Below are positions 1 through 51,400 of a stretch of 64,000 bases of DNA, piece after piece; position 1 is the first letter of the stretch; the number at the start of each line of letters is the position of its first letter. The translations under genes and the position numbers were made by a program. This DNA is from Ostrea edulis (taxonomy: Eukaryota). The stretch lies in NCBI RefSeq assembly GCF_947568905.1, contig NC_079164.1, positions 26,288,001 to 26,352,000 of the forward strand, given 5' to 3'. The notes below the pieces were generated by a model. It ran no database searches, was not told where the DNA came from, and saw only the letters and a program-made list of their open reading frames with translations.

Positions 1-44
1 GATATATTGATACACGCACCAGAGTGATATACTGCTTGTTTAAA

Positions 45-177
45 TCACTCTTTGGTTTTGGGCATTTTGATTGGTCGCAGTGCATCCGAGTGCCAGGTCC
101 TGATGTTAGCGAGTGCCCGGTTGATCTTGTTACACCAGTTTATTCTCTCCTCTTTAGTGTCAGCAGAAATCATGTGC
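45..177 (-). CDS. ANLN: ANLN last coding exon 19
   Basis: tttag|[28 protein letters not shown]...KTKE* (TGA at 45-47). Confidence 0.95.
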
Positions 178-3100
178 CTAAAACAAAAACAAGGCATTGC
201 TATACATACATCACAGACCAATAAACTATACATACAAGTAGTTTTGTACCACTGAACACAGGTCAAGTTTGACACAACTTATTTTCATCTATTTTAAAAC
301 CACATCCCAAGTGGGTGAATTTTTAAACTTTAACTGAATGAATTTGAATTTACTCTTTATTGTAAAATGGAGGATACACAAAACAAAAACACAGAAACAA
401 ACCACTTTGACCATTTTCAAAATGGGACAAGCTGTTTTTCTATGCATGAAGTGAACATTTTCCTGCATGCTTTATTACTTTCCTATATGTCTGGAGCTCA
501 TTTTACAAAAGCTTTAATATCTGAAATTTAATAGAACCCTTTCAACATGTTTTATATTTCAATATATTTCTTCACAATAAGTGGGTCATCGCAATAAACA
601 ATTAGTTTTCAAACAAAACAGGTCCTACTGAACCCGACAGTGGTGTCTCCTTGTACATATGCATAGGTGTGCTTATTTCCTATGTGATTCTAACATCCAA
701 GTCAAAATATGGGTAGACCAGTAGTAAATGAATATTTCTGAACATTCCAATGACTGGATTACAAGACAAATGTTGGCAGAATCTACTGGTGGATGTCGTG
801 ACAACACAAATGTTGGCAGAATCTACTGGCGGATGTCGTGACAACACCAATGTTGGCAGAATCTACTGGCGGATGTCGTGACAACACAAATGTTGGCAGA
901 ATCTACTGGTGGATGTCATGACAACACAAATGTTGACAGAATCTACTGGTGAATGTCGTGACAACACCAATGTTGGCAGAATCTACTGGTGGATGTCGTG
1001 ACAACACCAATGTTGGCAGAATCTACTGGTGGATGTCATGACAACACAAATGTTGACAGAATCTACTGGTGGATGTTGTGACAACACCAATGTTGGCAGA
1101 ATCTACTGGTGGATGTCGTGACAACACCAATGTTGGCAGAATCTACTGGTGGATGTCATGACAACACCAATATTGACAGAATCTACTGGTGGATGTCGTG
1201 ACAACACAAATACTGACAGAATCTACTGGTGGATGTCATGACAACACACATGTTGGCAGAATCTACTGGTGGATGTCATGACAACACAAATGTTGGTAGA
1301 ATCTACTGGTGGATGTCATGACAACACAAATGTTGGTAGAATCTACTGGTGGATGTCATGACAACACAAATGTTGGTAGAATCTACTGGTGGATGTCATG
1401 ACAACACAAATGTTGGTAGAATCTACTGGTGGATGTCATGACAACACAAATGTTGGTAGAATCTACTGGTGGATGTCATGACAACACAAATGTTGGTAGA
1501 ATCTATTGGTGGATGTCATGACAACACCAATATTGACAGAATCTACTGGTGGATGTCATGACAACACAAATGTTGGTAGAATTTACTGGTGGATGTCATG
1601 ACAACACCAATATTGACAGAATCTACTGGTGGATGTCATGACAACACAAATGTTAGTAGAATCTACTGGTGGATGTCATGACAACACAAATGTTGGTAGA
1701 ATCTACTGGTGGATGTCATGACAACACAAATGTTGGTAGAATCTACTGGTGGATGTCATGACAACACAAATGTTGGTAGAATCTACTGGTGGATGTCATG
1801 ACAACACAAATGTTAGTAGAATCACCTGGTGGATGTCATGGTGTTGTAGGTCTTGCTGATCAGCGTGTCCTCCTCTCCTCGTCTGGGCTGGCGGACTGTA
1901 ACCATTTCAAATGTGTTGGGTCTGGCACAGATGTCTCGAGGGATCAGGCCCACTTTCTCCGTCACACATCTTTTTAAATCAACAACTCCCATTGGCTCCT
2001 ACAGAAAAATAAACTTCTACTTTTAAATTCTATTACTTATATATATAACAAGAGTACCGTGAACAGTACATAATACGCCCGTGAGAAGGTTATATAGGGT
2101 GTTTTTATTATAAGATGTTTGTTTTGTGACATTGATTAGCAAACATGGTATAAATGTCAGGAGTTGTAGAACTTTACTTAAGGTAGTATCAGACATCAAG
2201 CTGTACGTGATATGCTTTGTTTTGTATTATATGAATAAATGAAGGTCTTTACTAAATTACCTGGTCTTTTAAATTTTCAAATCTTATCAAGGTAGCTTTA
2301 TAGTCGATATACAATGTATGAGTAATAACTTATAAATCTGTGGATCATAGGTTTGAATCTTTACAGTCGATATACAATGTATGGGTTAACCTATAAATCT
2401 GTGGATCATAGGTTTGAATCTTGCAAAATTAGAAATTTTTCATGCAACAATAAAATGTACTTTTGCAAGAGTTTATGCAAAATCTATTACATCAGCTCAA
2501 TATTAAAAATATATCAACTAAATTAATAAATTACATTTGAACTAGTTCCAAGTCTCAACTACTTGTATCATTAATTATAAAACTGAAATACACGTATAGA
2601 AGTATAAAAATCAGTTCATGAATAGAAATGGCCTGGTTGCTTTAAATATGTTATCTATCATAGAGACAGCAGTACAAAACATCGAAAAAATTACATTAAA
2701 TGTAGAATTAAAAAAACCCAACAACAACAACACAGAAGCATAGGCGCCTGGGTCAAGGATATTGCACTATAACCTATATGTAAACAATGAAGGAAATTCC
2801 AACCACGAATAAATATTTCTCTCTGATCTATGGTGTCTCTTTATACATTTTTTCATGTTCCAGGAAGCTTAAATACACGTGTCATTATCACAGAACACTA
2901 ATTTATCCACGTTTTAAAAAGTGTCTTATCCCACTGATTCATAATATATAACAAGGCTTGCAACTCAATCTACCCCTTTCCGTACCCCATGACAGATATT
3001 TGTCGATTAAAAGTTATTTACACTGCTTACCAGCCAGTTTCTGGGCCCCATTCACTCCCAGTAATTCTTCTTTAATAATTAAAATCCTCTAATAACAGCT

Positions 3101-6100
3101 GTCTATCCGTTGTATATTTTTAATAATTTTTTTCTGTCCAGAGTCATCTCATTCAAATCTCTAATCACGGAAGTGCGTAAACAGTACAAAATTCGAAACG
3201 GAATAAGGGATATCCGAATTAATCTCGAGTTCCGAAAGATACTATGGCTATGTAACCCCCAGAGGATATCGATACACTGTAGCATTGGCGCTATTTGTTA
3301 TTTGGTAATGCAGACGCGAGTGCCCCCCCCCCCCCCCCCATTTTCAACAGTAGTAGTGAGTAGTATATTGTGAATTTAATGAGAGGAATGTATGCTTTAA
3401 TGTCATGAAATAGCAGTAAAATCTCCACAGAAGATTGTTGGTTTTTCTGTTTTACTTCCCGTCGAGAATGTTATACTCACATTGAGACATCGCCATTTGT
3501 AGGGGAGTTAAACTGAAAAACCCGTGATTCTTACTCCTAAATACCGAGTGTTTGACAAAACGATCGGAGCTCGAACTCACAACCTCCCGGTTACAAAGCT
3601 CAACCACTGAACTCTCGCGACCGGTAGCAGCAGAAAGAATAAAAATCTTCACAAGCAAAGACAATAACAAAAGGGAAAAAAAAAAAGAAAGAAAAAAATT
3701 ACATCAACAAAATTCCTAATTTGTGCGGGGGAAGAGATGTCTTATAATGCCTCAAATAAAAAAGAAATTCCCTAGTTTTTAATTTCTTATACTCCATGGG
3801 GAGGAGGTGAGTAAAGGGTTTTACTACTATTTCAGGACTTGATTCTTCTTTCACTACTACTGTTAAAAATGGGGGGGGGGGGGGGCTCGGCTCGGCTCAC
3901 ACAATATATTTGATTGTATTACAAACCACAAATAATGGTCATTATAAAAAAAGGGGGGAGGCAACACCCACCCACCCCGATTCTACGTGCCTGGTTTTTT
4001 GTTTAATCATCTCACCTAAACAACAATTGAGGGGAGGGAATGTATAAGACAGGTAGTGAAACTAATCTAAGCTGAAAGAAAAAGATCCTAGTGGGGGGAA
4101 AGTGGTAGGAACCGGCCCTTTACCCCCTCGTTCACTTCTGGGTACCTATTTTATTTTGTTCTCATTTCTTTTTATGTCGCATTGTTTTGGAATTCATAAA
4201 ACCTTGATAGTTTAGGCTGTTGTTAGATAGAGTGCCAATACTCTCAATATTCTTTGGGGTTTACATAGCCTTTCAGAACTCGAGATTAATTCGGATATCC
4301 CTTATTCCGTTTCGAGTTTTGTACTGTTTACGCACTTCCGTGATTAGAGATTTGAATGAGATGACTCTGGACAGAAAAAAATTATTAAAAATATACAACG
4401 GATAGACAGCTGTTATTAGAGGATTTTAATTATTAAAGAAGAATTACTGGGAGTGAATGGGGCCCAGAAACTGGCTGGTAAGCAGTGTAAATAACTTTTA
4501 ATCGACAAATATCTGTCATGGGGTACGGAAAGGGGTAGATTGAGTTGCAAGCCTTGTTATATATTATGAATCAGTGGGATAAGACACTTTTTAAAACGTG
4601 GATAAATTAGTGTTCTGTGATAATGACACGTGTATTTAAGCTTCCTGGAACATGAAAAAATGTATAAAGAGACACCATAGATCAGAGAGAAATATTTATT
4701 CGTGGTTGGAATTTCCTTCATTGTTTACATATAGGTTATAGTGCAATATCCTTGACCCAGGCGCCTATGCACAGAAGCAATTTTAAAATGTCACATGTAT
4801 ATCTTCAATGTTTTTATAACATCTATAATGTACAAGGTCTGAAAAATGTCAAGTAAAAGCTATGAGGAGTTGGTTAAACAAAGTAGGTACCATGATGCTT
4901 AAAAAATGACAAAGTTCAACTACATCAGGTACATGTAAATTTTTCGAAGAATGTTAGATCACTTCCAAAAAGACAAATGCACATCTTCAATGTGTCCATA
5001 GCAATTGTACAATGTTTGAGGTATGTCAAGTTAAAAGTGTAAGAGGAGTTGATTACAGAAAGTACATATCCTATTACAGGGAAGCCCGCCCGCCCGCCAT
5101 TCACCATTTTATAAGCTGTTTGCATGTTGTACAACCCATCCAAAAATAGAAGGAAAATTGGATGAAAAAGAAACTGTATTATCATGCAGATTTAGGACTT
5201 TTTGATTAATCAATCCTTCCGCCACAAAATATAACCCCTGTCAAACCCTTTCAAAATTTGAATTGACACAAAATGTTAAAACTGGATAGGGTTCAGTAAT
5301 AGATGTGTAATATGTTTGCACCAATGGGATCAGTATTGAACCAGTAAATACTTAGTTGTAACATCCTGCTCAGTTGTGCTCAAAAGCTCAGGTGCTAACT
5401 TCCTTAATCCTTCAATCATTTAATATATATATGTACATATTGTAACCTATAGTAATAAATCACTCTCCTGTATAAACCCAATATCTGCAACTGTTCTTGT
5501 AATTAATCCCTGAAGCTTTCTTTATGCATAAAGAATGATGAAATTCTAATACAGTTACATGTAAAATTTCTGTCTATTTCTATAGAATCTGGATAATTTA
5601 TGATGTGTTCACAAACAGTGTACAGCACCAACTCCAATATAGCTGCAATAATGTAGCCCTCTTCGATTTTCTTGGGGGGGGGGGGGGTGTAAAAAAAATA
5701 TTGGATAGGGCTACATTATTGCAGCTAACCCCAATAGTGTATTACCCATTTACCAACAGTCTGATACATACTGACAGCATACAAGTTTTATACACATGTA
5801 ATAACAGTTAGACAGCCTCATTCTCAAAAGTCCTGGTTCATATTGGGTGAATGTGGTTCTAATATTTTAGAGACAGATCAGATTCTATGATTTACACTCA
5901 ATTACTTCCCAACACACCCAAACAATTCCAGGATCACCGCAAACTGGTTGAATTTGCAAATTTTGAAGTGGTTGAAATGTAGTGTAAATTACATTGAAAA
6001 TGCAAAGGAGTACAGGAATTATTGCAGTTATATAACACACGGCTATTGTTCTAGATTAATATAACACTGACTGCAGGGATGTGACTGAATTCCTCAGAAA

Positions 6101-9100
6101 TAAGAGGAAAATTGGTCAAAAAGGGAGGAAAACACCTCACTCTACCTGGAAAAATATCATTTTCTGTCACTTTAGATCAAACCCAGCATCTATCATTTTA
6201 TAAAAAATTGACCAAATCTGAGGATTTCCTCAAAAAAGAGAAAAAATCACACCCCCATGACATTATTCCAGATTTATCTTGCCATGAATTTATTAAATAC
6301 CTTTCTGGTTTCTTCATCAGGGTATTTCCAGAAGCAGAGTTTGTTCCCTTTTAGAGCACTCCATCGTCTGTGCCATGCACCAAATCCACTGACATCCTCA
6401 AACATTGTCTACAAAAATGAACAGATTTTATTGATGAAACAAGAAAAAATTTCAAAGGAATTACTAAAGGAAAAGGGATATAACTCTGAATATTTACAAG
6501 AAAATATTGATATTTCCAATGTTCTTCACAAATTGTAATTATAACCATTTCCCCATGAATGCACTACAGAACTTTGTAAACAATACACATATTAATGAAT
6601 CTTGATAAAATGTAACACTTATATTTTAATGGCTGGGAATTCCGACAAATGAAAGTAGTCTAGGATGTAAATATATGAAATAAATTACATTTCTGAATAT
6701 ACACGAGCATATGAACTGTGACACTGTACTATTTATAAGTCCAAACTCACAGAGGCCAGCATGAAGTGTCACAGTTCATACCCTATCAAAGGTATTTTAA
6801 CAAATGAAACCCATTTCTTGAATATGCCCTTGATCTGTAAAAAAGCATAATAAAAAACATATCATAAATCTACTTTATAGCTCATTATGTCAATAAAAAT
6901 TAAATATAGGCAAACTTAAGTATGGTGACTTTAAACACACAAATAGACAGACACACATAAATGTGAATTTAGAGTTTAAACACACAAATAGACAGACACA
7001 CATACATGTGAATTTAGACTTTAAACACACAAATAGACAGACACACATACATGTGAATTTAGAGTTTGTGAATTGGAATTGTATACTGTCCGTGTCTGTG
7101 AATAATGAGGCCTACTGAACACACACAAATATTCTGTTTGTAATTAGTTTTAATATCATATAGACTGTTGTAAATGACTTGAGTATCTCGTGGCATGGTT
7201 TTCTGTTTGTGATGCGTTTTAGGTTTAATATTATAAAGACTGTTGTAAATGACTTGAGTATCTAGTGGCATGGTTTTAGGTTTTGCAGCAGTGAAGTTAT
7301 TCACCTAGGAATCATACAATATTGAAATAAGTGATTTATCCTTGAAGAGAATACAGACAAAATATCTTTTAAATATTTCATAGAACTGCAGGTTTACATC
7401 ACCACAATAATGATAATAATTTTTCAACAACACTCGCACATAATAGATGACAGGACATGTATTGGAAAATACAAATATAAAATGAATGCAATTTTAAAGA
7501 ATATTAACTTGCATATATGCATAAGGGTCATATTACAAACCTAACCATGAAGTATCAAAATTTGTGTTATCAACCCTGGGCTTGAAGCTAACTTTTTATG
7601 TCACTAGTCCAGCCGGACTGATAGGGTATAATTTCAACCAGTCTGCAGAAAAAATTACCAGAGTTTTCCAGAAATAGTTAATCATATTTCGTTAATGTTA
7701 TCAAAATGAAATTTAATTCAATATGCCTCAGACAATATTGCAATACATTTATATTTACGAATCAGATTCATCTGATATCTAGATATCAAAGAAATTTCAT
7801 AAGTATATTTTCCAAAATGATGCTTTAGAAAATTAACCAGTCATATCGGACTGACTAAAACAAATATCAATCAGTCTGCCAGACTTTTAACCCAGAGATT
7901 TTTTAAGGGTCTGTAGAGGGCCGAAATTCAGCCCCATTCCCAATGCTAAAGAGCAGGTGTTTTTCCCAAAATGATGCATTAAAATTCCCAAATGATGGAT
8001 GCTTTGATGAGAATATGCCATGGGGCACCATCCAACCTTCAAGTTGGTGCCACTCTGTTGCAAAACATTTTTGACAGTTTTTTCTCTGCCAAAGACCGGA
8101 AATTAAAGCTTGTTTAAGCCACATTGATAATGAAATATCAAATGGTTAACTTTTTACTTGTTTTTCTTATTTATTTGTATGAAACAAATTTCCCAATTTC
8201 AATCAAATATCATTATTTTCCCCAAACTTGAAGGCCCTGGCCCCTGGATTCAAGGGGTAAAAAAATCCCTGTAACCAGTCACAGACTGACAGGCATATGT
8301 TAATTTCGAGTCCTGCAACAACCCCCCAACCCCCCCCCATGATTTTTCCATAGACCATTAACTTGATCTGATAGCCAGATAAGTGGTTTTTTTGGGGTCA
8401 CTCTGATCTACTTAAGGTACATGTAATACTGCAATCATATACATGTATATTATTTTTTAATAATTTTTATAATCATTTCAACCATATGAATATTAGTTTT
8501 GCAGCAATAACATTTCCTACAGAAAAAAAAGAATAACAACAACAAAAAAGCCTGCACAATAAAGGGACAAAATGCATTTCTATTATTGGTCACTGGAGTA
8601 CCTTAACCCTACATCTGTGCGTCACTTTGGAGTTAGATGTTTCATTGTACAATTTTAACAGCAAACAGATATCTGCATGATGCCATATAATATTGAAATT
8701 TTTTGTTTTGACCTAATTATGAGACAGATTTTGAGAAAATAATTTAGTAAAAGACATGCTAATGAATGGAAAATAGGAAGGAAATCATGTTATGTCCACT
8801 GAAATAATCCCAGGATGATGTGAATATACACCTCCAGTTAGTACAAAATCTGAATCAGGATGGTCGGACCTTTAATTTCCAGATTTAAAGCAAACTTTTA
8901 TCAAGGTCGTCCAAGTTATTGAGGGTCACCCCTATATATCATTTGTAATTGATGTCATTACAACCTTCAAGTCACAACACACCTTCCCTATACGACACAT
9001 CAACTGAAAAGGTTTGATGATTCAAAGACTCCAAAATTAGGAACCAGAAATAGTTTTTCTTCATTTCATCTTTCTTTAAGGCTGAAATACACCTTATTTC

Positions 9101-12100
9101 TAAGATGCATCAACTGATAAGGTCCGACGCTTCAAGGCCCCAAGTTTCATAGTAATAAGCTGGGCATAGAAAGGCTAACAGACGGACAACATTGTCAATT
9201 TGTAATACTATCAATCTGATTAAAATACAGATCTCTCAAATAGCGCACAGCTCTCAGCTTTGTGTGTTGAGAGATCTATATTTTAATTAGATTGCCATAC
9301 TATTATACAGCCTGTCATGGATGTGCATATAAGAAGTTATTTAGAACATTTTTAAATTGGAATAGTGTTGGGCAACAGAGAAAAAGGTGTCTTGTGTTGC
9401 AATAAAATCTAATTTGAATTTGTAAACATGAAATCAAGACTCACCAAGAATCCTCTTTCTTCTACATTTTGTTCCATTAAACATTTCAGTCTCATGTAAA
9501 TTGTACCATGTAGAGGTGACAAATAGGGAATCTAAAACAGAGGGCACAATTAGTGAAAGGATCACAAATGTGAACAGTTTTCTACTCTGAATGTTTAATA
9601 TCATTTTTAAGACATGAAAAGTTCTATCATCAAATGCTGTCAATTCCAATGTACCTTGGAATGATGTTATATTATTCAACTAAAGGAAGACTTACTCTCT
9701 CCAGCGTGAAGCAGGTCTTGTCCAGGGCCCTCATAGTGATGGGGAGTGAGGTAATCAGAGTGAAGCTGGTCGTCCTCACAGCCATAGGACCACCAGGACT
9801 GGGAGCTAGATAATGATCTACACAATGTCAATAACTCACACACAGCACCACCAGGACTGGGAGCTAAATAATGATCTACACAATGTCAATAACTCACACA
9901 CAGCACCACCAGGACTGGGAGCTAAATAATGATCTACACAATGTCAATAACTCACACACAGCACCACCAGGACTGGGAGCTAAATAATGATCTACACAAT
10001 GTCAATAACTCACACATAGCACCACCAAGACTGGGAACTAAATAATGATCTACACAATGTCAATAACACACACATAGCACCACCAAGACTGGGAACTAGA
10101 TAATGATCTACACACAATGTCAATAACTCACACATAGCACCACCAAGACTGGGAACTAGATAATGATCTACACAATGTCAATAACACACACATAGCACCA
10201 CCAAGACTGGGAACTAGATAATGATCTACAATGTCAATAACTCACACATAGCACCACCAAGACTGGGAACTAGATAATGATCTACAATGTCAATAACTCA
10301 GGACATGCACATGTTCTGAGGACCAGTTGTCAGTTCTTTTTGTATATTAGAAAGAGAGAAGTAAGCATATATACTTGTTACTACTGTTAGTGATATATAC
10401 ATGTATACTTATAAATTACACGAGCCTATGAGTATCAGATTCTGACAGAATTGCATATTTCTCAGTACCTGGTGCCAGGTGTCCTCTGGCTGTCTTTTTC
10501 GGAGTCTTTCTTTTCTTGTCCTTGATTGCCTCTCTAGAAATGGACTGGAATTCAAAGTTAAATTTTTTGTTTTATATACATTAGCTACAGGGTTGCAATG
10601 ACACTTTTTAACCAGTGGTTGTAAGAGAAAGGACACAGAACGGGTAGAGAGCATCGATTTACTGAATAAAATGCAGACTATTTTTGTTAACATTCATTGT
10701 AATTCCATCCATTCAAGTGTACATAAAAAACATTTCAAAAAGTTATCCTTACGTATTCACCATGCTTAAGTGGCAACAAGGAAATGTATACATAAAGAAC
10801 GTAAATTGACCTGTACTTTGTTCCTTACCATGCTGTAGATTTCTAGGTTAAGTTTAAAGCTGCCAGAGATGCCATGGATTTTGATGAGGTTGGGAAAGTC
10901 CAAACTGCCCCTCATCATTGGGTCGTGAGTGGACAACATTTGGGTCATTATCACCTGGGCGTGATTCCGGATCAGTAACAGGAAGTAGTGAACTGTGTTA
11001 TCTACAAACACCAAAATAAACTCAAAAGTTTAAAATCTTCAATACATATACTGACATTTTGATAAAATCAGTTAGTATGCATATATGTACATTTTAAGAA
11101 AAAAATTTATCCCAAGAGTCTCATCCTGTCAGATATTTTAGCATTGAAAACATTCATACTGAGTTTTAATACTGTGTAAAACAACACATCATATCAATGA
11201 CTAGAACTTAGAAACACAGAAAACTACATATGGAAAAAAATTTCAATGTTCAATGCATGATTCTCTGATTGTCAAATCCTTCAAACAGTGTCAAAAATCA
11301 TATATCGTATTTTGCCGAATATACGCAGTTGTGTTTAATACGCAACCCCCACTTTGGGCTTGTAAATTTGGGGGGGAAAAAAGAAAGCATTTCGTGTGTG
11401 TAATACACAGCAAAGATTTTGATCAAGCAGGAAATCTTAACGTTATACTTTGGATTTTTACTGAACATTTTTGCGGAAATAATGAATTATAAAACAAAGA
11501 ATAAGAATTTGCAAACCACGCAGCTATATTTTTGAGATAAGTCATCTCGAATTTCAACATCATGGTAATCTTCACTGAATATCTCGTGTAAACGTCATGT
11601 TAATTGTTAATTTCAGCAAAGCACGAGATTTTGTAGCATTAAAGTTTGAAGAGATTGGATATTTCTTTGTTGAAACTTAAAATCATCTAAACAGTTGATG
11701 TTGTAAAACTAAAATCAAAATATTAAACTAGTTTTTAATTTGTTGTAATGAACATGCCACCAGTGATGGACATTAGGTGCGATATATTAAACCTCTCGTT
11801 AACTTTTAAAAATGATCATAATCTAGGGCAATAGTGCTGTAAATAATCAGTGCTCTGTCTGTAAATAATCAGTGCTTACAGTGCTCTGTCTAAAAATAAT
11901 CAGTGCTCTGTCTGTAAATAATCAGTGCTTACAGTGCTCTGTCTGTAAATAATCAGTGCTCTGTCTGTAAATAATCAGTGCTTACAGTGCTCTGTCTAAA
12001 CATAATCAGTGCTCTGTCTGTAAATAATCAGTGCTTACAGTATTCTGTCTAAATAATCAGTGCTCTGTCTGTAAATAATCAGTGCTCTGTCTGTAAATAA

Positions 12101-12503
12101 TCAGTGCTTACAGTGCTCTGTCTAAAAATAATCAGTGCTCTGTCTGTAAATAATCAGTGCTTACAGTGCTCTGTCTAAATAATCAGTGCTCTGTCTGTAA
12201 ATAATCAGTGCTCTGTCTGTAAATAATCAGTGTTTACAGTACTCTGTAAATAATCAGTGCTCTGTCTGTAAATAATCAGTGCTTACAGTACTCTGTAAAT
12301 AATCAGTGCTCTGTCTGTAAATAATCAGTGCTTACAGTGCTCTGTCTGTAAATAATCAGTGCTCTGTCAGTAAAAACAATGCTTTGGATATGGTAGAGCA
12401 ATGAATAATTCAAGCACAACAATCAACATTTCTTTCAAGCGCAATTGTGAAGTTTTTACTTCACATAAAAATTAAATATGGTGAACAGCACGGACAAGTA
12501 AAA

Positions 12504-32796: not shown

Positions 32797-35700
32797 TATT
32801 TGTAGGTGAAGTGTCACAAATTTAGGCTCAACGCCGTAACAGTAAGGGTTCTTAAAGACTTTATCGTGTCAACACCTGCATGCCGCGACACGGGGCCCCC
32901 GTTTTTAAGGTCATATACGAACGTTTGGCCGAGCGTTTGGTGAAGGAGCAATCACTACCTATATTAACGTCTTAGGTTTGACGCGGCCATGGCACCCGCG
33001 GGGCTCAAATTCACGACCATCCGGTTACGAAGCGAACGTTCTACCACTGAGCTACCGTGACCGGTAAAACATTACGTAGGAAATGTCCTTTTTGTATAAT
33101 TATGGAGTTCCTTTTATCACTTAAACATAGAAATTCAATGGCATGGCTATTGAAAATAAGGTTTATTTGTGAAACACTGATGCTCCCGTATGACAGCGAA
33201 GTTGATAATTACCAGGGTTAAAGTTTTTCAAAAAATAGGTCAAAGGTCAAGGTCATGAGGTCACAAACTTTGGTTCCTAAAGAAAGGTCTTCTCAAATGG
33301 AAAGTACATGTGAAATATGAAAGCCATATATATCACCTTCCATTCAAATGCTACTGTCAGGGTTAACGTTCTTGCCGACAGACAGATGGACAGACCAACA
33401 AAAAACAAAACAAAAAAAACAACTACATGCCCCAGAATCTTCGATTAAGGGATATAAAAAGGGGGGAAATATCAACAACGACGGAAGGAAAGGTCCAAAA
33501 GTATAACCCTACAAACCGAAAAACTCCAACTGAACAGTCGTTAATTACAAAATGTAACGAAATAAATATTTAAAGATTCATGAAATAGTTGAGTTTTCGA
33601 GTTTCTGTCTGATGCCTTAACATGTATCAGTGTGCATGTGAATGGAAGAACTGACAAGTATGGTGGTATATTTCTACCATCACTTGTCAGGTAATTATGT
33701 CGACTTGTCGGATAATTATGTCGACTTGTCGGGTAATTATGTCGACCTGTCAGGTAATTATGTCGACTTGTCGGGTAATTGTGTCGACTTGTCAGGTAAT
33801 TATGTCGACTTGTCAAGTAATTATGTCGACTTGTCAGGTAATTATTTATACATGTCAGCTACTGTTGTCCACTTGTCAAATAAAAGTTTTAAAAGGTTTA
33901 ACCGTAAAAATACTTTCACGCTCAAAATGTTCTGACAAGTCGACATAATCTAGCAAGCTTAACCCTAAACCAAGATCATTTTGACAACATTTCCTACCTT
34001 TTTGTCGACTTGTCTGATGATCTTGTCAGATCGTGATGTTGACTTGTCAGATTGTGATGTTGACTTGTCAGATCGTGATGTTGACTTGTCAGATCGTGAT
34101 GTTGACTTGTCAGATTGTGATGCTGACTTGTCTGATATTGAAACGAAAAGTAGATGTCAGCAAATGGCTTTAGCATATCAAAATAAAAAAAAAAAATTGG
34201 AAATGACAGGTCAACATAATCATCTGACAAGTCGACATAATTAACTGACAAATCGACATAAATATCTGAAAAGGAATTATGGAAGAAATTGCATCACTTT
34301 TGAAGAACCACAACATCATGGAATTTAGAACTGCGTTTTGTATGACTATATCGGTTGAGTATGATCGAGTCAATACTGGCTGTAACTCATATAATATTCC
34401 CTTTCTTGTTCGTAGAAAGTGACTCCTCTGTAATCGATCTACTCCAAATTAAGATCATTCGCAGTGTTTAGTGTACGTGCCTTCTTTTCCAGTATGTACA
34501 GTGGTGTTGGGATTAGCGGAACAGCTGTCCGTAATACACAATGAGACGGTGGTTAGAGGTCTGGAGAGGCTGTGTAACTTTCTACCTCCGCCTTATCAAG
34601 GAGCTTGTAAAGAGTTTACAGATTTCATTGCAGATGACATTATCAGATCGTTAGTTACAATACATGCCATATACAATGTATACACAGGGGGGGGGGGGGG
34701 GGGGGGATATCGCAACACCGGCTTCTTTCTTAGCCTGAGTATAATGATTAATTTCACATTACAAGATGAATAGTAGACTTGCTCAAGTCTCTATGTTTAA
34801 TAATCAGTGCTCTCTTTAATACTTTTAATAATGCCAAACTATATGTTTGGTGACATTTAAGAATGGTAGAGAGCAGATATTTAGATTTTGTTTTGTATTA
34901 CTTATAGGAGTTATGCGATTGATCACTGTTCGTTATCTTCACCTTTCATACAACATAGACTTGAGCAGGTCTAGATGAATAGCTTTTCATAGTTGACATC
35001 ATTTTTTAAATAGCATCACTTGATCTTAAAAAATGTAAAAACGCCATCTGTAAATATATTTACTGTCATTCTCTTTCAAAGGTGAGAAATTTTACAGTAA
35101 ATAACTATACCCCTATCTATTAATTCAAATGTCTATTATGAATAAAACAAAGTTAAATAAGGTTGACATGTAGAAATCAAACTAAACAGGTTTTTTCATT
35201 ATCTAGTGTGTAACTTCCGTTCACACGAATGACGGACTTCATGCGTCTTCTTAAATCTCTGCTCATATTATATACAAACAATGGAGGAAATTCGAACCAT
35301 GAATAATATTTCTCTCAGATCTATTTTGTCACATTTTACTTTTTTTTTATGTTTCAGAAAGCTTACATGTGTCATTGCCACAATACTAATTTATCCACGT
35401 TTAAATGTTATATATCGTTAGATCGATCGATCGATTGATCTAGATCGATTTTTGCCCACTGATTTATTTTTTACACATGGGTAGGTTATCTCTCCAAAAT
35501 GAAAAAAAAATCTAATAGTTGTAATTTCCATTGACCTGGTATAATATCACGTGCTATAAAATCAATGAAAATGTAGGATATTCTTGATTCATGTAAGTGT
35601 AAGTGAAAAGGGTTTCTTTCTTGCACCTCTAAGTGAAAAATAGCATTACAAATATGCAAAATACGGGATCTTGATAGAATATGTTTTTGAATTGACACAT

Positions 35701-38700
35701 CATCCATACACTAGCAGCTTGTACAGGCATGTATTTTCAAAATAAGTCGTACAGGTAGTTAGCTACATGTAACAGTTCAATGTAGATGAAATGCGTATAT
35801 ACTTTGTTTGATTTTAGCCCACTTTTGTACTTTGCACAATTGTATTATGCATATTATGTACAAGAAAGAAATTAAAATGAAAATTATCTATTTGTACCAT
35901 TTTGTTTTACAATTTCAAATTGTACTAAATGACAATATACATCATGATATTTTTAACTAATTCCAATCCCTTTATCACAAGATTCTCCCAGGACGACACG
36001 GCAGATACAGCGTGTCACAAGCTATCGTTCTGTTTCACGGATCCCAGTACAGACACCTGTCATATCTTCCCTAGGAAACCCAGCCATAGAGATAGGTTGC
36101 TGAAATTTGTCCAGGTATGGAAGTACAATATATCAATTGTCAACATACATAGAGTATTAAATCACTCTCCTAAGTTATAGTAACACTAAATGCCCTCGCT
36201 TTAAGTCAGGAAAAGCAGATATTTATTAGTGTCTTTCCGTTCTTCTGTGTCTGTCTTTCGGTGGATCGGTCTTTCTTGAAATTTTACTTTATACAATTGA
36301 ATATATGTTTTAAAATATAGTAACACATGACATTTTTCCTAAAGTTTCATTGAAAGAGTTTTGTCAATTTATTGATGTATCCAAGTCTCGGCTACACTTT
36401 AAAACACATAGAATATGCATTTCCTTGAACTAAATTAAAAAATAATAATAATGAAGAAACGACCCAGAAATCACGAAACTTATACTTGAACTTTAAAAGT
36501 ATGCATATCCTTATATTTACATGAACATTTCCAATGTTTTTTCATTCGATGTCTTTAAACCAGTTGAAATGATAGCCATTTCCAATGTGCCTATCAATCT
36601 TGATAAATATATAGTACGACTGTTCTTACGGCTGGGAATATTCAGAAATGAAAGTAAAATGTAAATGTAAAAAAATAAATAAATTTCCAAAACTATTCCA
36701 TTTTGATTTACTAGGTCTCGAATAACTGGATAGAACGGTAGCTTAAACAGTACATGTTCATCAAATTAAACAGCACACGCTCATCAAATTAAACAGCACA
36801 CGCTCATCAAATTAAACAGTACATGTTCATCAAATCAAACAGTACATGTTCATCAAATTAAACAGTACATGTTCATCAAATTAAACAGCACACGCTCATC
36901 AAATTAAACAGCACACGCTCATCAAATTAAACAGTACATGTTCATCAAATCAAACAGTACACGCTCATCAAATTAAACAGTACATGTTCATCAAATCAAA
37001 CAGTACACGCTCATCAAATTAAACAGTACATGTTCATCAAATTAAACAGTACATGTTCATCAAATCAAACAGTACATGTTCATCAAATCAAACAGTACAT
37101 GTTCATCAAATTAAACAGTACATGTTCATCAAATCAAACAGTACATGTTCATCAAATTAAACAGTACATGTTCATCAAATTAAACAGCACACGCTCATCA
37201 AATTAAACAGCACACGCTCATCAAATTAAACAGTACATGTTCATCAAATCAAACAGCACATGTTCATCAAATTAAACAGCACACGCTCATCAAATCAAAC
37301 AGTACATGCTCATCAAATCAAACAGTACATGCTCATCAAATTAAACAGTACATGTTCATCAAATTAAACAGTACATGTTCATCAAATTAAACATTACATG
37401 TTCATCAAATTAAACATTACATGTTCATCAAATTAAACAGCACACGCTCATCAGATTAAACAGTACACGCTCATCAGATTAAACAGCACACGCTCATCAG
37501 ATTAAACAGTACATGTTCATCAAATTAAACAGTACATGTTCATCAAATTAAACATTACATGTTCATCAAATTAAACATTACATGTTCATCAAATTAAACA
37601 GCACACACTCATCAAATTAAACAGCACACGCTCATCAAATTAAACAGTACATGTTCCTCAAATTAAACAGTACATGTTCATCAAATTAAACAGCACATGC
37701 TCATCAAATTAAACAGCACACGCTCATCAGATTAAACAGTACATGTTCATCAAATTAAACAGCACACGCTCATCAAATTAAACAGTACATGTTCATCAAA
37801 TTAAACAGCACACGCTCATCAGATTAAACAGTACATGTTCATCAAATTAAACAGTACATGTTCATCAAATTAAACAGCACATGCTCATCAAATTAAACAG
37901 CACACGCTCATCAGATTAAACAGTACATGTTCATCAAATTAAACAGCACACGCTCATCAGATTAAACAGTACATGTTCATCAAATTAAACAGCACACGCT
38001 CGATCATCAGATTAAACAGTACATGTTCATCAAATTAAACAGCACATGTTCATCAAATTAAACAGCACACGCTCATCAGATTAAACAGCACACGCTCATC
38101 AGATTAAACAGTACATGTTCATTAAATTAAACAGTACATGTTCATCAAATTAAACATTACATGTTCATCAAATTAAACAGTACACGCTCATCAGATTAAA
38201 CAGTACATGTTCATCAAATTAAACATTACATGTTCATCAAATTAAACAGTACATGTTCATTAAATTAAACAGTACATGTTTATCAAATTAAACAGTACAC
38301 GCTTATCAGATTAAACATTACATGTTCATCAAATTAAACAGTACATGTTCATCAAAATAAACAGTACTTGTTCATTAAATTGTATTATGGACAGATTTAT
38401 TCATTGCGTGTTCAATTTTTGTGCGGAGAGTTAGCGTATTTGAAATTGCTTTTTACTTTAAAAATATTGAGGACAATGTTAAAGCTATCATGGTTTTATG
38501 ACTTGTCCCATTGCTTTGCTCTGATTTGACGCCACCACATGAAAAGCTCCATTCGATTTCTGCAATTTTTCACATGTCTTCCTCTCTGAATAATCGATGA
38601 CCTATATTGCTTTTGAAGACAAAGGTCATGTTGTCCTGCTCACATAAGTTAACAAGATGGTCTCTGGACGATATCTCCGATGTTCTTCTTTTGTAAAATC

Positions 38701-41700
38701 TCAAATACCAGCCGTAAGATAAACTGAGGCACACAGATTTTTTTTTTTTTTAGACCAACAGACGTCATCGGACCGGGGCGAATATTTGCGATTTACCAGG
38801 AATAAAAAGGATCTGCGCCTGGATTAATGAGTAAATATCTAAAATTTCTTCACAGTTTCTTTTAGAATACACTGAAAAGATAGATATTGCTTTTGTTGTT
38901 CCGCACCACGTTTGGGGCGGTAATTTCTTCACAGATATGTGGTACTTCAACCGGCATGATACTCTGACTGCTTTGTGGTATAAAAGGAGTGAAGGATTAC
39001 ACACGAACCACATACCGGTATCAGCAAGAAAACTTGCTAGTTGTGTCTATCTAGGCAACTAGGTATAATTTTAGTGTAACAATCAAGATAACTGGTAGTT
39101 TTAGAGTGTCTATCAAGATAACTGGTAGTTTTAGTGTGTCTATCAAGATAACTGGTAGTTTTAGTGTCTATCTAGATAACTGGTAGTTTTAGTGTGTCTA
39201 TCAAGATAACTGGTAGTTTTAGTGTGTCTATCAAGATAACTGGTAGTTTTAGTGTCTATCTAGACAACTGGTAGTTTAATGTGTCTATCAAGATAACTGG
39301 TAGTTTTAGTATGTCTATCAAGATAACTGATAGTTTTAGAGTGTCTATCAAGATAACTGGTAGTTTTAGTGTGTCTAACTAGATAACTGGTGGTTTTATT
39401 GTGTCTATCAAGATAACTGGTAGTTTTAGTGCGTCTATCAAGATAACTGGTAGTTTTAGTGCGTCTATCAAGATAACTGGTAGTTTTAGTGTGTCTATCA
39501 ATATAGCTGGTAGTTTTAGTGTGTCTATCAAGATAACTGGTAGTTTTAGTGTTTATCAAGATAACTGGTAGTCCTAGAGTGTCTATCAAGATAACAGGTA
39601 ATTTTAGTGTGTCTATCAAGATAACCGGTAGTTTTAGTGTGCCTATTAAGATAACCGGTAGTTTTAGTGTCTATCTAGATAACTGGTAGTTTTAGTGTGT
39701 CTATTAAGATAACTGATAGTTTTAGTGTTTATCAAGATAACTGGTAGTTTTAGAGTGTCTATCAAGATAACTGGTAGTTTTAGTATGTCTATCAAGATAA
39801 CTGATAGTTTTAGAGTGTCTATCAAGATAACTAGTAGTTTTAGAATGTCTATCAAGATAACTGGTAGTTTTAATGTGTCTATCAAGATAACCGGTAGTTT
39901 TAGTGTGTCTATCAAGATAACTGGTAGTTTTAGTGTGTCTATTAAGATAACCGGTAGTTTTAGTGTCTATCTAGATAACCGGTAGTTTTAGTGTGTCTAT
40001 CAAGATAACTGGTAGTTTTAGTGTGTCTATCAAGATAACCGGTAGTTTTAGTGTGCCTATTAAGATAACTGGTAGTTTTAGAGTGTCTATCAAGATAACT
40101 AGTAGTTTTAGTGTGCCTATTAAGATAACCGATAGTTTTAGTGTTTATCAAGATAACTGGTAGTTTTAGAGTGTCTATCAAGATACCAGGTAGTTTTAGT
40201 GTGTCTATCAAGATAACTGGTAGTTTTAGTGTGCCTATTAAGATAACTGATAGTTTTAGTGTTTATCAAGATAACTGGTAGTTTTAGAGTGTCTATCAAG
40301 ATAACAGGTAGTTTTAGTGTGTCTATCAAGATAACCGGTAGTTTTAGTGTGTCTATCAAGATAACTGGTAGTTTTAGTGTGCCTATTAAGATAACCGGTA
40401 GTTTTAGAGTGTCTATAAATATAACTGGTAGTTTTAGTGTGTATATCGAGATAACTGGTAGTTTTAGTGTATCTATCAAGATAACCGGTAGTTTTAGTGT
40501 GCCTATTAAAATAACCGGTAGTTTTAGTGTCTATCTAGATAACTGGTAGTTTTAGTGTGTCTAATAAGATAACTGATAGTTTTAGTGTTTATCAAGATAA
40601 CTGGTAGTTTTAGAGTGTCTATCAAGATAACTAGTAGTTTTAGTGTGTCTATTAAGATAACTGATAGTTTTAGTGTTTATCAAGATAACAGGTAGTTTTA
40701 GTGTGTCTATCAAGATAACCGGTAGTTTTAATGTGTCTATCAAGATAACCGGTAGTTTTAGTGTGTCTATTAAGATAACCGGTAGTTTTAGAGTGTCTAT
40801 AAATATAACTGGTAGTTTTAGTGTGTATATCGAGATAACTGGTAGTTTCAGTGTGTCTATTAAGATAACTGGTAGTTTTAGTCTCTGGATAGCTATGTAT
40901 ACTTTTAGTTGGTAGCTTAAATTTCTAACTTCTGTAGAAATACATGTATATGTTAATTGATTTCTATGTGTCATCTCTACGTTGTATTTAAACCAAGACT
41001 GATGTACAGTGAACAGTATTTCTGTCTTGTATACCAATCGTATCATCTATGATTTCACTTTTTTCTTGCAGTATATTTAGTAAACACGATCCCGCCATAG
41101 ACCTGGACGGCGACTTCCACAGCGTGTACCAGGTAAGTGTAATAAACTGTCCATCTAACAATATGTCATATATCCCATCGGGTCAACATCAGAATTATTG
41201 AACCACCAAGGGGTAATATATTTATGCAACAGTATTTTTATTTTGCATGTTTTGTTGACTGTAAGACAACTAATTTTTGTTAAAGAGTAAATATCGTGAA
41301 TATTGTGCATCAGCACACCGACGAATTAATATCATTCATGGAATGAGAAAGTGAATTCCACCATGCCTGGGTGCCACTTCAGAGAGGACACCATGAACCA
41401 CAGTGTATTTGACCTGGTGAAAATAAGCGGTGTTATACAGTATGCAATAAACCGAATTCTAAATATATTTCTTTTGATCGCAGACTTTAAGAGGGTCATC
41501 TTGGCGAGGAAAAGATTGTGATGACGAAAGGGAATTATTTCATCCGGGTGCAAAGTAAGTTTACAGTCTTGACAGTTGTTTCTGGACCATCAAGAGCGGT
41601 CTTCATACGACGTGTTTAAAAACCAAATTAAGATCAAATAATGGAACTAATGATTAAAGCTATATATGTTGTATTTAGTTGTATTTTTTCTATGTTGGAA

Positions 41701-48400: not shown

Positions 48401-51400
48401 AAGTGCAAACAGTTTACAAATTAATCAGATAATTAAAAATACATTGAATGCCGACAAAGGTCAGTGATCTATATAACAATGTTGTATGCCTATCTTCCAA
48501 TTAATGCTTTAGTATTCCACCCATCGCATCACCTATCTAAATCACCACCCAACACATCACAACCTAGCACATCACCTACCTACATCACCACCCAACACAT
48601 CACCTACCTACATCACCACACAACACACCACCTACCTACATCACCACCCAACACATCACCTACCTACAACTCTACACAACACATCACCACCCATCGCATC
48701 ACCTATCTAAATCACCACCCAACACATCACAACCTAGCACATCACCTACCTACATCACCACCCAACACATCACCTACCTACATCACCACCCAACACATCA
48801 CCACCCAACACATCACCTACCTACATCACCACCCAACACATCACCACCCAACACATCACCTACCTACATCACCACCCAACACATCATCACACAACACATC
48901 ACCACCCAACACATCACCTACCTACATCATCACCCAACACACCACCTACCTACATCACCACCCAACACACCACCTACCTACATCACCACCCAACACATCA
49001 CCTACCTACATCACCACCCAACACATCACCTACCTACAACACCACCCAACATATCACCTACCTACATCACCACCCAACACACCACCTACCTACATCACCA
49101 CCCAACATATCACCTACCTACATCACCACCCAACACACCACCTACCTACATCACCACCCAACACATCACCTACCTACATCATCACCCAACACACCACCTA
49201 CCTACATCACCACCCAACACATCACCTACCTACATCACCACCCAACACATCACCTACCTACATCACCACCCAACACATCACCTACCTACATCATCACCCA
49301 ACACATCACCACCCAACACATCACCTACCTACATCACCACCCAACACATCACCTACCTACATCACCACCCAACACATCACCTACCTACATCATCACCCAA
49401 CACATCACCACCCAACACATCACCTACCTACATCACCACCCAACACATCACCTACCTACATCATCACCCAACACATCACCACCCAACACATCACCTACCT
49501 ACATCACCACCCAACACATCACCACCCAACACATCACCTACCTACATCACCACCCAACACATCACCTACCTACATCACCACCCAACACATCACCTACCTA
49601 CATCACCACCCAACACATCACCACCCAACACATCACTTACCTACATCACCACCCAACACATCACCTACCTACATCATCACCCAACACATCACCACCCAAC
49701 ACATCACCTACCTACATCACCACCCAACACATCACTTACCTACATCACCACCCAACACACCACCTACCTACATCACCACCCAACACATCACCTACCTACA
49801 TCACCACCCAACACACCACCTACCTACATCACCACCCAACACATCACCTACCTACATCACCACACAACACATCACCACGCAACACATCACCTACCTACAT
49901 CATCACCCAACACATCACCTACCTACATCACCACCCAACACACCACCTACCTACATCACCACCCAACACACCACCTACCTACATCACCACCCAACACATC
50001 ACCTACCTACATCACCACCCAACACATCACCTACCTACATCATCACCCAACACATCACCACCCAACACATCACCTACCTACATCACCACCCAACACATCA
50101 CCTACCTACATCATCACCCAACACATCACCACCCAACACATCACCTACCTACATCACCACCCAACACATCACCACCCAACACATCACCTACCTACATCAC
50201 CACCCAACACATCACCTACCTACATCACCACCCAACACATCACCTACCTACATCACCACCCAACACATCACCACCCAACACATCACTTACCTACATCACC
50301 ACCCAACACATCACCTACCTACATCATCACCCAACACATCACCACCCAACACATCACCTACCTACATCACCACCCAACACATCACTTACCTACATCACCA
50401 CCCAACACACCACCTACCTACATCACCACCCAACACATCACCTACCTACATCACCACCCAACACACCACCTACCTACATCACCACCCAACACATCACCTA
50501 CCTACATCACCACACAACACATCACCACCCAACACATCACCTACCTACATCATCACCCAACACATCACCTACCTACATCACCACCCAACACATCACCTAC
50601 CTACATCACCACCCAACACACCACCTACCTACATCACCACCCAACACACCACCTACCTACATCACCACCCAACACATCACCTACCTACATCACCACCCAA
50701 CATATCACCTACCTACATCACCACCCAACACATCACCTACCTACATCACCACCCAACACATCACCTACCTACATCACCACCCAACATATCACCTACCTAC
50801 ATCACCACCCAACACATCACCTACCTACATCACCACCCAACACACCACCTACCTACATCACCATCCAACACATCACCTACCTACATCACCACCCAACACA
50901 TCACCTACCTACATCACCACCCAACACACCACCTACCTACATCACCACCCAACACATCACCACCCAACACATCACAACCTAGCACATCACCTACCTACAT
51001 CATCACCCAACACATCACCACCCAACACATCACCTACCTACATCACCACCCAACACACCACCTACCTACATCACCACCCAACACATCACCACCCAACACA
51101 TCACCTACCTACATCATCACCCAACACATCACCACCCAACACACCACCTACCTACATCACCACCCAACACATCACCTACCCAAATCACCACCCAACACAT
51201 CACCTACCCAAATCACCACCAAACACATCACCTACCTACATCACCCAACACATCACCTACCTACATCACCACCCAACACACCACCTACCTACATCACCAC
51301 CCAACACATCACCTACCTACATCACCACCCAACACATCACCTACCCAAATCACCACCCAACACATCACCACCCAGCACATCATCACACAACACATCACCT

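What the first reader, a model, noticed from the sequence alone, without database searches (positions are those of the whole stretch)
9790..10301. A minisatellite forming an array of eight frame-preserving 24-nt pseudo-microexons upstream of anillin exon 15
Seen in sequence (sense strand): each 58-bp unit reads ttat(t/c)tag|24 nt|gt. The eight 24-mers are 10246-10269, 10190-10213, 10132-10155, 10072-10095, 10014-10037, 9956-9979, 9898-9921 and 9840-9863. Six have a consensus GTGAGT donor and two have GTGTGT. They are phase 1-1 like the host intron and stop-free, encoding APSPGGAV(S) (proximal) or VPSLGGAM(S) (distal). The unit is the real exon-15 acceptor plus exon start, joined through a TGAG microhomology, which created GTGAGT from exonic GTGAGG. 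The raw exon piece is 26 nt (frameshifting); a 2-nt deletion shared by all copies makes it 24 nt. Spacers are only 32-36 nt, so adjacent units should be sterically mutually exclusive. Inference: a VNTR-built, copy-number-variable alternative-splicing cassette that could insert an extra SP-containing peptide next to the polybasic loop ([10 protein letters not shown]). Frame preservation could also be chance (about 1 in 3).
Basis: partly seen in the sequence, partly recalled or inferred. Interest (0 to 1): 0.85.

Follow-up and report, generated by a model that had tools for sequence, protein, structure and literature searches.

The report
Splice-site decoy repeat in oyster anillin
An intron of the flat oyster's anillin gene holds eight tandem copies of the next exon's splice acceptor region, but the available RNA and annotation evidence shows the cell skipping all of them, so this looks like a young, tolerated repeat and not a new splicing cassette.

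Summary
The window is Ostrea edulis anillin.

One premise needs correcting. Assembled RNA from two runs joins exon 14 (last base 10469) to 9817, not to 9805. RefSeq isoforms show that both AGs are used. They form a 12-nt tandem alternative acceptor (+/-DHYL) that is also present in two Saccostrea species. Each unit therefore copies a candidate branch site, both AGs and the exon start, followed by a junction-made GTGAGT. This gives eight pseudo-exons of 36 nt (or 24 nt), separated by only 20-24 nt (or 32-36 nt).

The array is absent from both Saccostrea genomes. The exon peptide SPGGPxAVRTTSF is conserved across molluscs, so the exon is the source and the array is a young copy specific to the Ostrea lineage.

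No RNA contig, RefSeq isoform or protein-cluster member contains a repeat-derived insertion. Contigs cannot exclude rare isoforms, however: they also missed the annotated -12 isoform. Unit variants in other individuals break the frame, the donor or an AG, which argues against selection on the pseudo-exons.

Most likely reading: a tolerated intronic minisatellite of skipped splice-site decoys. The human ABCA7 donor repeat is the closest precedent. Interest is modest.

The parts
10469..10544 (-). It encodes [25 protein letters not shown] and ends in phase 1. Its donor is GTACTG.
   Evidence: RNA contig joints 10829|10544 and 10469|9817 in X15 and X1; translation
9818..10468 (-). Intron 14, 651 nt, GT..AG. 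The 5' ~170 nt are unique and the rest is the array.
   Evidence: Joint 'skips 651, CT..AC' in two runs; ends read
9783..10300 (-). 58-bp minisatellite, 9.0 copies, 96% matches. The ninth copy is the real intron end plus the start of exon 15.
   Evidence: Tandem Repeats Finder
10297..10300 (-). Intron-side TGAG at the start of the array (one side of the founder junction)
   Evidence: Direct reading
9775..9778 (-). Exon-side TGAG inside exon 15 (GTG AGG, Val-Arg). It is the other side of the founder junction, and fusing the two gives GTGAGT.
   Evidence: Direct reading; GTGAGG is conserved in Saccostrea exons
10246..10281 (-). Decoy 1: 36-nt copy of the exon start (both AGs are kept; the 24-nt version is 10246-10269), distal type ([12 protein letters not shown]), followed by GTGAGT
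10190..10225 (-). Decoy 2, distal type, followed by GTGTGT; the spacer before it is 20 nt
10132..10167 (-). Decoy 3, distal type, followed by GTGAGT
10072..10107 (-). Decoy 4, distal type, followed by GTGTGT; the spacer before it is 24 nt
10014..10049 (-). Decoy 5, hybrid (TTATTTAG with a distal-type body), followed by GTGAGT
9956..9991 (-). Decoy 6, proximal type ([12 protein letters not shown]), followed by GTGAGT
9898..9933 (-). Decoy 7, proximal type, followed by GTGAGT. It is the last decoy whose donor is far enough (80 nt) from the real acceptor to be spliceable.
9840..9875 (-). Decoy 8, proximal type. Its GTGAGT (9839-9834) lies only 22 nt upstream of the real acceptor.
9827..9831 (-). 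TTGAC, the only good branch-site-like motif of the unit. Its A at 9828 is 10 nt from the first AG and 22 nt from the second, and it is repeated in every unit. This is a candidate only.
   Evidence: Direct reading. CTGAT sits at the same place in Saccostrea. The branch-site assignment is an inference and was not tested.
9696..9817 (-). Real exon 15 as used in the dominant mRNA: 122 nt, [17 protein letters not shown]...TLER, donor GTAAGT
   Evidence: RNA contigs X15 (3501 nt, depth 62) and X1; identical to O. edulis isoforms X1/X3/X4/X6
9806..9817 (-). 12-nt alternative segment (DHYL) between the two tandem acceptors.
   Evidence: Isoform comparison; the same +/-4 aa pair occurs in two Saccostrea species
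9445..9531 (-). Exon 16, 87 nt ([29 protein letters not shown])
   Evidence: Joint 9696|9531; translation

Best explanation
This is a young intronic minisatellite specific to the Ostrea lineage. It began when a ~58-60-bp segment spanning the 3' end of intron 14 and the first ~43 nt of exon 15 of anillin was duplicated in tandem through a 4-nt TGAG microhomology. The founder copy acquired a 2-nt deletion and a C>G change, and was then amplified to eight copies that fall into two block-wise subtypes.

Each copy carries a full 3' splice-site module: a branch-site-like TTGAC and both AGs of a conserved 12-nt alternative acceptor pair. A GTGAGT made at the junction follows it. The spliceosome nevertheless uses the ninth, genuine copy.

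What is shown: the dominant mRNA joins exon 14 to 9817 and skips all decoys.

What is inferred: the decoys fail because an AG with a 5' splice site only 24-36 nt downstream makes an exon too short for exon definition. In addition, donor-to-next-acceptor distances of 20-36 nt are shorter than any validated spliceosomal intron, and each GTGAGT lies 7 nt from the next unit's candidate branch site. Only the last acceptor is followed by a normal 122-nt exon with a GTAAGT donor. On this reading the array is tolerated, probably near-neutral and variable in copy number, and it is not a functional cassette.
For: Array and unit anatomy.

The dominant junction 10469|9817 appears in two independent RNA contig sets, with no joint into or out of any unit.

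Six RefSeq isoforms differ here only by +/-DHYL, and none has a repeat-derived insertion.

The acceptor pair is single-copy in S. echinata (intron ~140 nt) and S. cucullata, so the array is recent.

SPGGPxAVRTTSF is conserved across molluscs, so the exon is ancestral.

The four substitutions among units give 3 amino-acid changes and 1 silent change if read as coding, which shows no sign of coding constraint.

Unit variants in other samples remove the second AG, shorten the (TG) run by 2 nt or insert 1 nt in the donor.

The array RNA has no stable structure (z = +2.4).

Exons under 51 nt are spliced poorly and are often skipped (PMC8378409). The shortest validated human introns are 43 nt (PMC4463651).

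The companion array in the same gene copies the exon-18 donor, and all 22 exact-motif copies have TA instead of GT. This is consistent with boundary-derived arrays expanding only when they are harmless to splicing.
Against: Only assembled contigs were available, not reads. Contigs drop minor isoforms, and they did not show the annotated -12 isoform either.

The decoys are identical to the real site from -22 to +29 and their donors match the consensus, so some use would not be surprising.

In run X1, RNA contigs run unspliced from array units into exon 15 at about a third of the junction depth, while the unique part of the intron has none. This is unexplained.

Frame preservation of both pseudo-exon versions (24 and 36 nt) fits the cassette idea, although it is expected by chance about 1 time in 3.

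The reasons given for why the decoys fail rest on vertebrate and nematode data, not on oyster data.
Confidence: 0.7

Rival explanations
1. The reader's idea, adjusted for the corrected acceptor. Non-adjacent units are spliced in at low level or in particular tissues as 36-nt (or 24-nt) in-frame microexons. This would add one or more 12-aa (or 8-aa) DHYL(A/V)PS(P/L)GGA(V/M) peptides to the variable loop after the polybasic stretch, with the repertoire set by copy number.
For: Both pseudo-exon versions are in frame and stop-free, and six of eight donors are GTGAGT. The decoy acceptors are exact copies of a working acceptor. The linker they would extend is the most length-variable part of this region across molluscs, at 8-14 aa. 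Contigs are insensitive to rare isoforms.
Against: There is no such junction in the RNA contigs of X15 or X1. There is no such RefSeq isoform or cluster member. The array is absent from Saccostrea. Unit differences show no coding constraint. Variants in other individuals break the frame, the donor or an AG. Microexons generally need dedicated enhancers or factors (PMC8378409).
Confidence: 0.12
2. The array acts as a block of decoy exons. Its splice sites engage U2AF/U2 and U1 non-productively, slow the removal of intron 14, and so tune anillin mRNA output (intron detention or NMD of +58n read-through products), with an effect that depends on array length.
For: In X1, RNA contigs are contiguous from array units across the unspliced real acceptor into exon 15, at depth 8.7 against 18.7 for the spliced junction. 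Decoy exons with functional but rarely used sites promote intron retention in human cells (PMC6097662, PMC7373989). ABCA7 VNTR length alters the splicing of flanking exons (PMC5954066). Use of any decoy AG without its donor gives a frameshift or an early stop.
Against: X15 (the same species as the window, exon depth 62) shows no array or unspliced contig at all. X1 shows no contig on the unique part of the intron, so full retention is not shown. Array k-mers are multiplied by copy number, which inflates their depth. The array is lineage-specific and variable. There is no functional test.
Confidence: 0.1
3. The array is an assembly artefact, for example a collapsed or expanded repeat in the reference.
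For: Only one assembly could be inspected; L003 is the same assembly as the window. Copy number cannot be read from k=31 contigs.
Against: Independent DNA contigs (X16) and RNA contigs (X1) contain unit-to-unit sequence longer than or equal to one period, with their own variants. Array contigs reach 28-30x against flanks of 3-6x. The internal subtype structure and spacer-length variants are typical of a real minisatellite.
Confidence: 0.03

Closest known systems
ABCA7 intron-18 VNTR (human; PMC5954066)
   Same: It is an intronic minisatellite that directly abuts an exon and whose unit contains a copy of that exon's splice site. Repeated cryptic sites therefore line the intron, and copy number varies.
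   Different: ABCA7 copies the donor (25-bp unit), and use of one cryptic donor (one-unit retention, out of frame) and length-dependent exon skipping were demonstrated. The oyster array copies the acceptor side (branch-site-like motif plus two AGs plus exon start) together with a new donor. The units form closed in-frame pseudo-exons, and no use has been detected.
Decoy exons in retained introns (SF3B1, OGT; PMC6097662, PMC7373989)
   Same: They are intronic pseudo-exons with good splice sites that are almost never included in mRNA.
   Different: Known decoys are single, conserved and of normal exon size, and their effect on intron retention was shown by mutation or antisense. Here there are eight tandem copies of 24-36 nt, specific to one lineage, with no demonstrated effect.
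Tandem alternative acceptors (NAGNAG-type and longer; my own knowledge, not looked up here)
   Same: The genuine exon-15 boundary has two AGs 12 nt apart, both used and in frame (+/-DHYL), and the pair is conserved in Ostreidae.
   Different: This describes the template that was copied and not the array. The spacing is 12 nt instead of 3.
Intron change by tandem duplication across splice signals (for example in Drosophila, PMC2891723)
   Same: A short tandem duplication spans a splice signal. Using the outer copy restores the original mRNA, so the duplication is tolerated and lengthens the intron.
   Different: Those cases involve a single duplication that creates or shifts an intron. Here the duplicate was further amplified into a minisatellite inside an existing intron.
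Ordinary intronic pseudoexons (review PMC8819188)
   Same: They are AG...GT pairs in introns that the spliceosome ignores unless a mutation activates them.
   Different: Typical pseudoexons arise by chance and have defects. These are exact copies of a working acceptor, which makes their skipping more informative.

Membership tests
Intronic minisatellite / VNTR | Head-to-tail copies with a period of roughly 10-100 bp | tested here: met
   Period 58, 9.0 copies, 96% matches
Intronic minisatellite / VNTR | Lies within an intron | tested here: met
   RNA joint 10469|9817 skips 651 nt that contain the whole array
Intronic minisatellite / VNTR | Copy number or unit composition varies between individuals | tested here: inconclusive
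   X16 and X1 contigs carry unit variants absent from the assembly. X16 array contigs reach 28-30x each (bins sum to 101-126) against flanks of 3-6x. The tool warns that depth is not a copy number, and no spanning reads were available.
Alternative cassette microexon | Transcripts or junctions that contain the exon | tested here: not met
   No such joint in the RNA contigs of X15 or X1. None in the 6 RefSeq isoforms or the cluster members. Sensitivity is low because contigs drop rare forms.
Alternative cassette microexon | Flanking introns long enough to be spliced | tested here: not met
   Adjacent units are 20-24 nt (or 32-36 nt) apart, while the shortest validated human introns are 43 nt (PMC4463651). 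The feature is met only for non-adjacent units (80 nt or more).
Alternative cassette microexon | Conservation of the exon and its frame across related species or individuals | tested here: not met
   Absent from S. echinata and S. cucullata. Frame- or site-breaking unit variants occur in X1 and X16.
Decoy exon that promotes intron retention | Pseudo-exon with consensus-like sites inside the intron, rarely included | tested here: met
Decoy exon that promotes intron retention | The host intron is measurably retained or detained | tested here: inconclusive
   X1 has unspliced contigs at the 3' end of the intron only, and X15 has none
Decoy exon that promotes intron retention | Retention depends on the decoy's splice sites | not testable with these tools
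   Needs a minigene or antisense experiment
Splice-site-bearing VNTR (ABCA7 type) | The unit includes a copy of the flanking exon's splice site | tested here: met
   Every unit has both acceptor AGs with identical -22/+29 context
Splice-site-bearing VNTR (ABCA7 type) | The repeated site is used, or repeat length alters the splicing of flanking exons | tested here: inconclusive
   Not seen in contigs; the length effect is not testable here
Tandem alternative acceptor pair (the genuine exon-15 boundary) | Two nearby in-frame AGs, both used in mRNA | tested here: met
   9817 in RNA contigs; 9805 in RefSeq isoforms X2/X5
Anillin | Anillin homology region followed by a C-terminal PH domain; orthology to annotated anillins | tested here: met
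   Pfam Anillin and PH hits on single exons, just below the curated cut-off. The exon 14-16 region is 100% identical to O. edulis anillin-like XP_056008629.1, which has PF16018+PF08174+PF00169. The window stretch 9300-10900 is an exact substring of that gene's locus.

The most novel reading that the evidence does not exclude
The units are used. In some tissue, stage or array allele, exon 14 splices to a decoy acceptor. This would either insert one or more in-frame 12-aa repeats into anillin's C2-domain loop next to the polybasic stretch, or (without the decoy donor) yield +58n-nt NMD substrates. A hypervariable minisatellite would then set anillin isoform content or dosage in an allele-specific way. 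The unspliced array-to-exon-15 RNA contigs in run X1 would be its trace.
Probability: 0.15. Interest if true: 0.6.

Novelty: new member of a known kind. Interest (0 to 1): 0.3.

Why it matters
As a functional cassette it would have been a rare case of a repeat-length polymorphism writing protein variants, but the evidence does not support that.

What remains is a clean natural experiment. Eight exact copies of a working 3' splice-site module, each with a consensus donor, sit directly upstream of the genuine one and are ignored. In the same gene, a sister array of donor copies has every GT disabled. Together they illustrate which boundary duplications can expand without harming a gene, and they offer a ready-made minigene substrate for studying exon definition in a mollusc.

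A practical by-product is a corrected exon-15 boundary and a conserved +/-D(H/Y/F)YL alternative acceptor in oyster anillin.

Tried and rejected
1. Run X17 gave no laid contig.

2. The look-up of encoding contigs with the X2 isoforms of Saccostrea found nothing, because only the longest product per gene is indexed. It was repeated with X1 isoforms and succeeded.

3. I searched fragment-sized proteins with P0170 to catch Logan transcript ORFs with repeat-derived insertions. Only distant taxa were returned, because oyster fragments sit inside full-length clusters.

4. A word search of the scan's notes for other boundary-derived arrays returned nothing.

5. I considered RNA structure masking the decoys and rejected it. 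The array folds worse than shuffles (z = +2.4) and the centroid is unpaired.

6. I considered that the exon start derives from a pre-existing repeat and rejected it. The peptide is conserved across molluscs, and the acceptor is single-copy in Saccostrea.

7. I considered that the 2-nt deletion was selected to restore the frame. This can be neither shown nor excluded. It lies in a TG run that is prone to slippage, and other individuals carry +1 and -2 variants at the same spot.

8. Copy number from contig depth is not used as a measurement, because the tool states that depth is not a copy number.

9. A tblastn count of exons was incomplete.

Full report
**Observation.** The array exists as described. 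Tandem Repeats Finder reports a single array at 9783-10300 with period 58, 9.0 copies and 96% matches. A 26-nt spacer motif occurs six times against zero expected. Six are followed by GTGAGT and two by GTGTGT, the spacers are 32-36 nt, and the two peptide types are as stated. It also confirmed that exon 14 ends in phase 1 after the polybasic [10 protein letters not shown]. TGAG is present on both sides of the founder junction (10300-10297 in the intron, 9778-9775 in the exon). All units share a 2-nt deletion and one C>G change relative to the real exon.

**Gene and organism.** The gene lies on the minus strand from about 29.8 kb to about 50. Single exons give Pfam Anillin and PH hits just below the curated cut-off. 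A search with the long central exon found full-length mollusc anillins. A second search found Ostrea edulis anillin-like proteins that are identical to the window across exons 14-16. The window stretch 9300-10900 is an exact substring of the O. edulis locus L003 (GCA_947568905.1, OX387704.1). The window therefore comes from that assembly.

**RNA evidence and the corrected boundary.** Only Logan contigs were available. A 3501-nt mRNA contig in X15 (depth 62) and two contigs in X1 show three joints in this stretch: 10829|10544, 10469|9817 (skips 651 nt, GT..AG on the minus strand) and 9696|9531.
- The dominant exon 15 is therefore 9817-9696 (122 nt).
- The six RefSeq isoforms of O. edulis fall into two sets that differ exactly by DHYL at this point: X1/X3/X4/X6 have it and X2/X5 lack it.
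- The same +/-4-residue pair occurs in Saccostrea cucullata (DYYL) and S. echinata (DFYL).
- The genomic motif, with two AGs 12 nt apart followed by CTCCCAG, is present in all three species.
- Non-oyster molluscs lack the four residues.

The template that was copied is a conserved 12-nt tandem alternative acceptor.

**Revised anatomy.** Each of the eight decoy units contains a TTGAC branch-site-like motif and both AGs. It also holds 36 nt (from the first AG) or 24 nt (from the second) of exon-derived sequence, followed by GTGAGT or GTGTGT.
- Both pseudo-exon lengths keep the frame and are stop-free.
- The distance from a decoy donor to the next unit's AGs is 20-24 nt or 32-36 nt.
- The donor lies 7 nt from the next TTGAC.
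- The last decoy donor (9839-9834) is 22 nt from the real acceptor, so only decoys two or more units upstream could be joined to exon 15, with an intron of at least 80 nt.
- Using a decoy AG without its donor extends exon 15 by 58n nt and gives a frameshift or an early stop.

**Origin and age.** SPGGPxAVRTTSF is conserved across bivalves, gastropods and cephalopods. The boundary is single-copy in both Saccostrea genomes. There, intron 14 is about 140 nt in one species, and about 1.7 kb with an unrelated 147-bp repeat in the other. The exon is therefore the source, and the array arose in the Ostrea lineage.
- The real copy keeps the ancestral state at all variable sites.
- The units form two blocks (five distal, three proximal) that differ at four transitions, all within the exon-derived part.
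- Read as coding, these make three amino-acid changes and one silent change, which shows no sign of coding constraint.
- Length variation is confined to the TG run.

**Is any unit spliced?** No evidence was found. There is no joint into or out of a unit in X15 or X1. No isoform or cluster member has a second D.YL[AV]PS. The limitation is serious, because contigs drop minor forms and did not show the annotated -12 isoform either.

Run X1 (about 2% diverged from the window) carries short RNA contigs that run from array units across the unspliced real acceptor into exon 15. Their depths are 5-16, against 18.7 for the spliced junction. The unique part of intron 14 has none, and X15 has none at all. 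Pre-mRNA signal multiplied by copy number, decoy-acceptor read-through and shared k-mers could each explain this. I leave it unexplained.

**Variation.** X16 behaves as low-coverage DNA, with flanks at 3-6x. Its array contigs are at 28-30x each, and it carries a unit variant with a 1-nt insertion in the donor. X1 units include a variant that changes the second AG to AC, and one with a 2-nt shorter TG run.

The array is therefore real in independent samples and variable. The features needed for an in-frame cassette are not kept in all copies. Depth is not treated as a copy number.

**Mechanism.**
- Shown: the ninth acceptor is chosen.
- Inferred: the decoys fail because a 5' splice site 24-36 nt downstream of an AG makes an exon below the ~51-nt size at which exon definition works (PMC8378409). 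In addition, 20-36-nt gaps are below the shortest validated introns, 43 nt in human (PMC4463651). Only the last acceptor is followed by a normal exon with a GTAAGT donor.
- RNA structure does not mask the decoys (z = +2.4).

A companion array in the same gene (761-1840, 40 bp x 27) copies the exon-18 donor region. All 22 exact-motif copies have TA in place of GT, and the array is also absent from Saccostrea (scan note s1-292229). This fits the idea that boundary-derived arrays expand only when harmless to splicing. Donor copies had to be disabled. Acceptor copies may be neutralised by their own junction-made donor.

**Comparison with known systems.** The closest precedent is the human ABCA7 intron-18 VNTR. 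Its 25-bp unit starts with the exon-18 donor, and both one-unit retention and length-dependent exon skipping were shown for it (PMC5954066). The decoy-exon model of intron retention (PMC6097662, PMC7373989) is a functional analogy that could not be tested here. Tandem duplication across splice signals is a known route of intron change (PMC2891723).

**Verdict.** The sequence observation is right apart from the 12-nt acceptor correction. The origin story is right. The cassette function is unsupported but not excluded. I read this as a new member of a known kind, a splice-site-bearing intronic minisatellite, and of modest interest as a natural test of exon definition.

Noticed in passing
window 9806-9817 (minus strand); L001 19687-19698; L002 16987-16998: There is a conserved 12-nt tandem alternative acceptor at the start of anillin exon 15. 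It gives +/-DHYL (O. edulis), DYYL (S. cucullata) and DFYL (S. echinata) in RefSeq isoform pairs. It is absent from non-oyster molluscs. It sits in the variable linker after the polybasic [10 protein letters not shown].
   Followed up: yes
window 761-1840 (minus strand): A second boundary-derived minisatellite lies in the same gene: 40 bp x 27, copying the last 15 nt of exon 18 plus the first 25 nt of its intron. The donor GT is replaced by TA in all 22 exact-motif copies. It is absent from both Saccostrea loci.
   Followed up: partly
window 9790-9894, run X1: RNA contigs run unspliced from array units into exon 15 at depths of 5-16, while the unique part of intron 14 and all of intron 15 have none. 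Another RNA run (X15) shows no such contigs. This is unexplained.
   Followed up: partly
L002 15628-16614 (Saccostrea cucullata intron 14): An unrelated 147-bp x 6.8 tandem repeat occupies the orthologous intron, so this intron has acquired different minisatellites in different oyster lineages.
   Followed up: no
window 11840-12374, 6930-7067, 33682-34273, 36743-38381, 39069-40882, 48517-52531: The window is very rich in minisatellites (periods 21-53 bp, up to ~140 copies). Tandem arrays in introns are therefore commonplace in this genome, which lowers the prior that any one of them is functional.
   Followed up: no
window 1-31000 versus L003: The window is from Ostrea edulis assembly GCA_947568905.1, record OX387704.1. 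A gene with saposin and GDSL-lipase domains lies just beyond the anillin 5' end on the opposite strand.
   Followed up: partly
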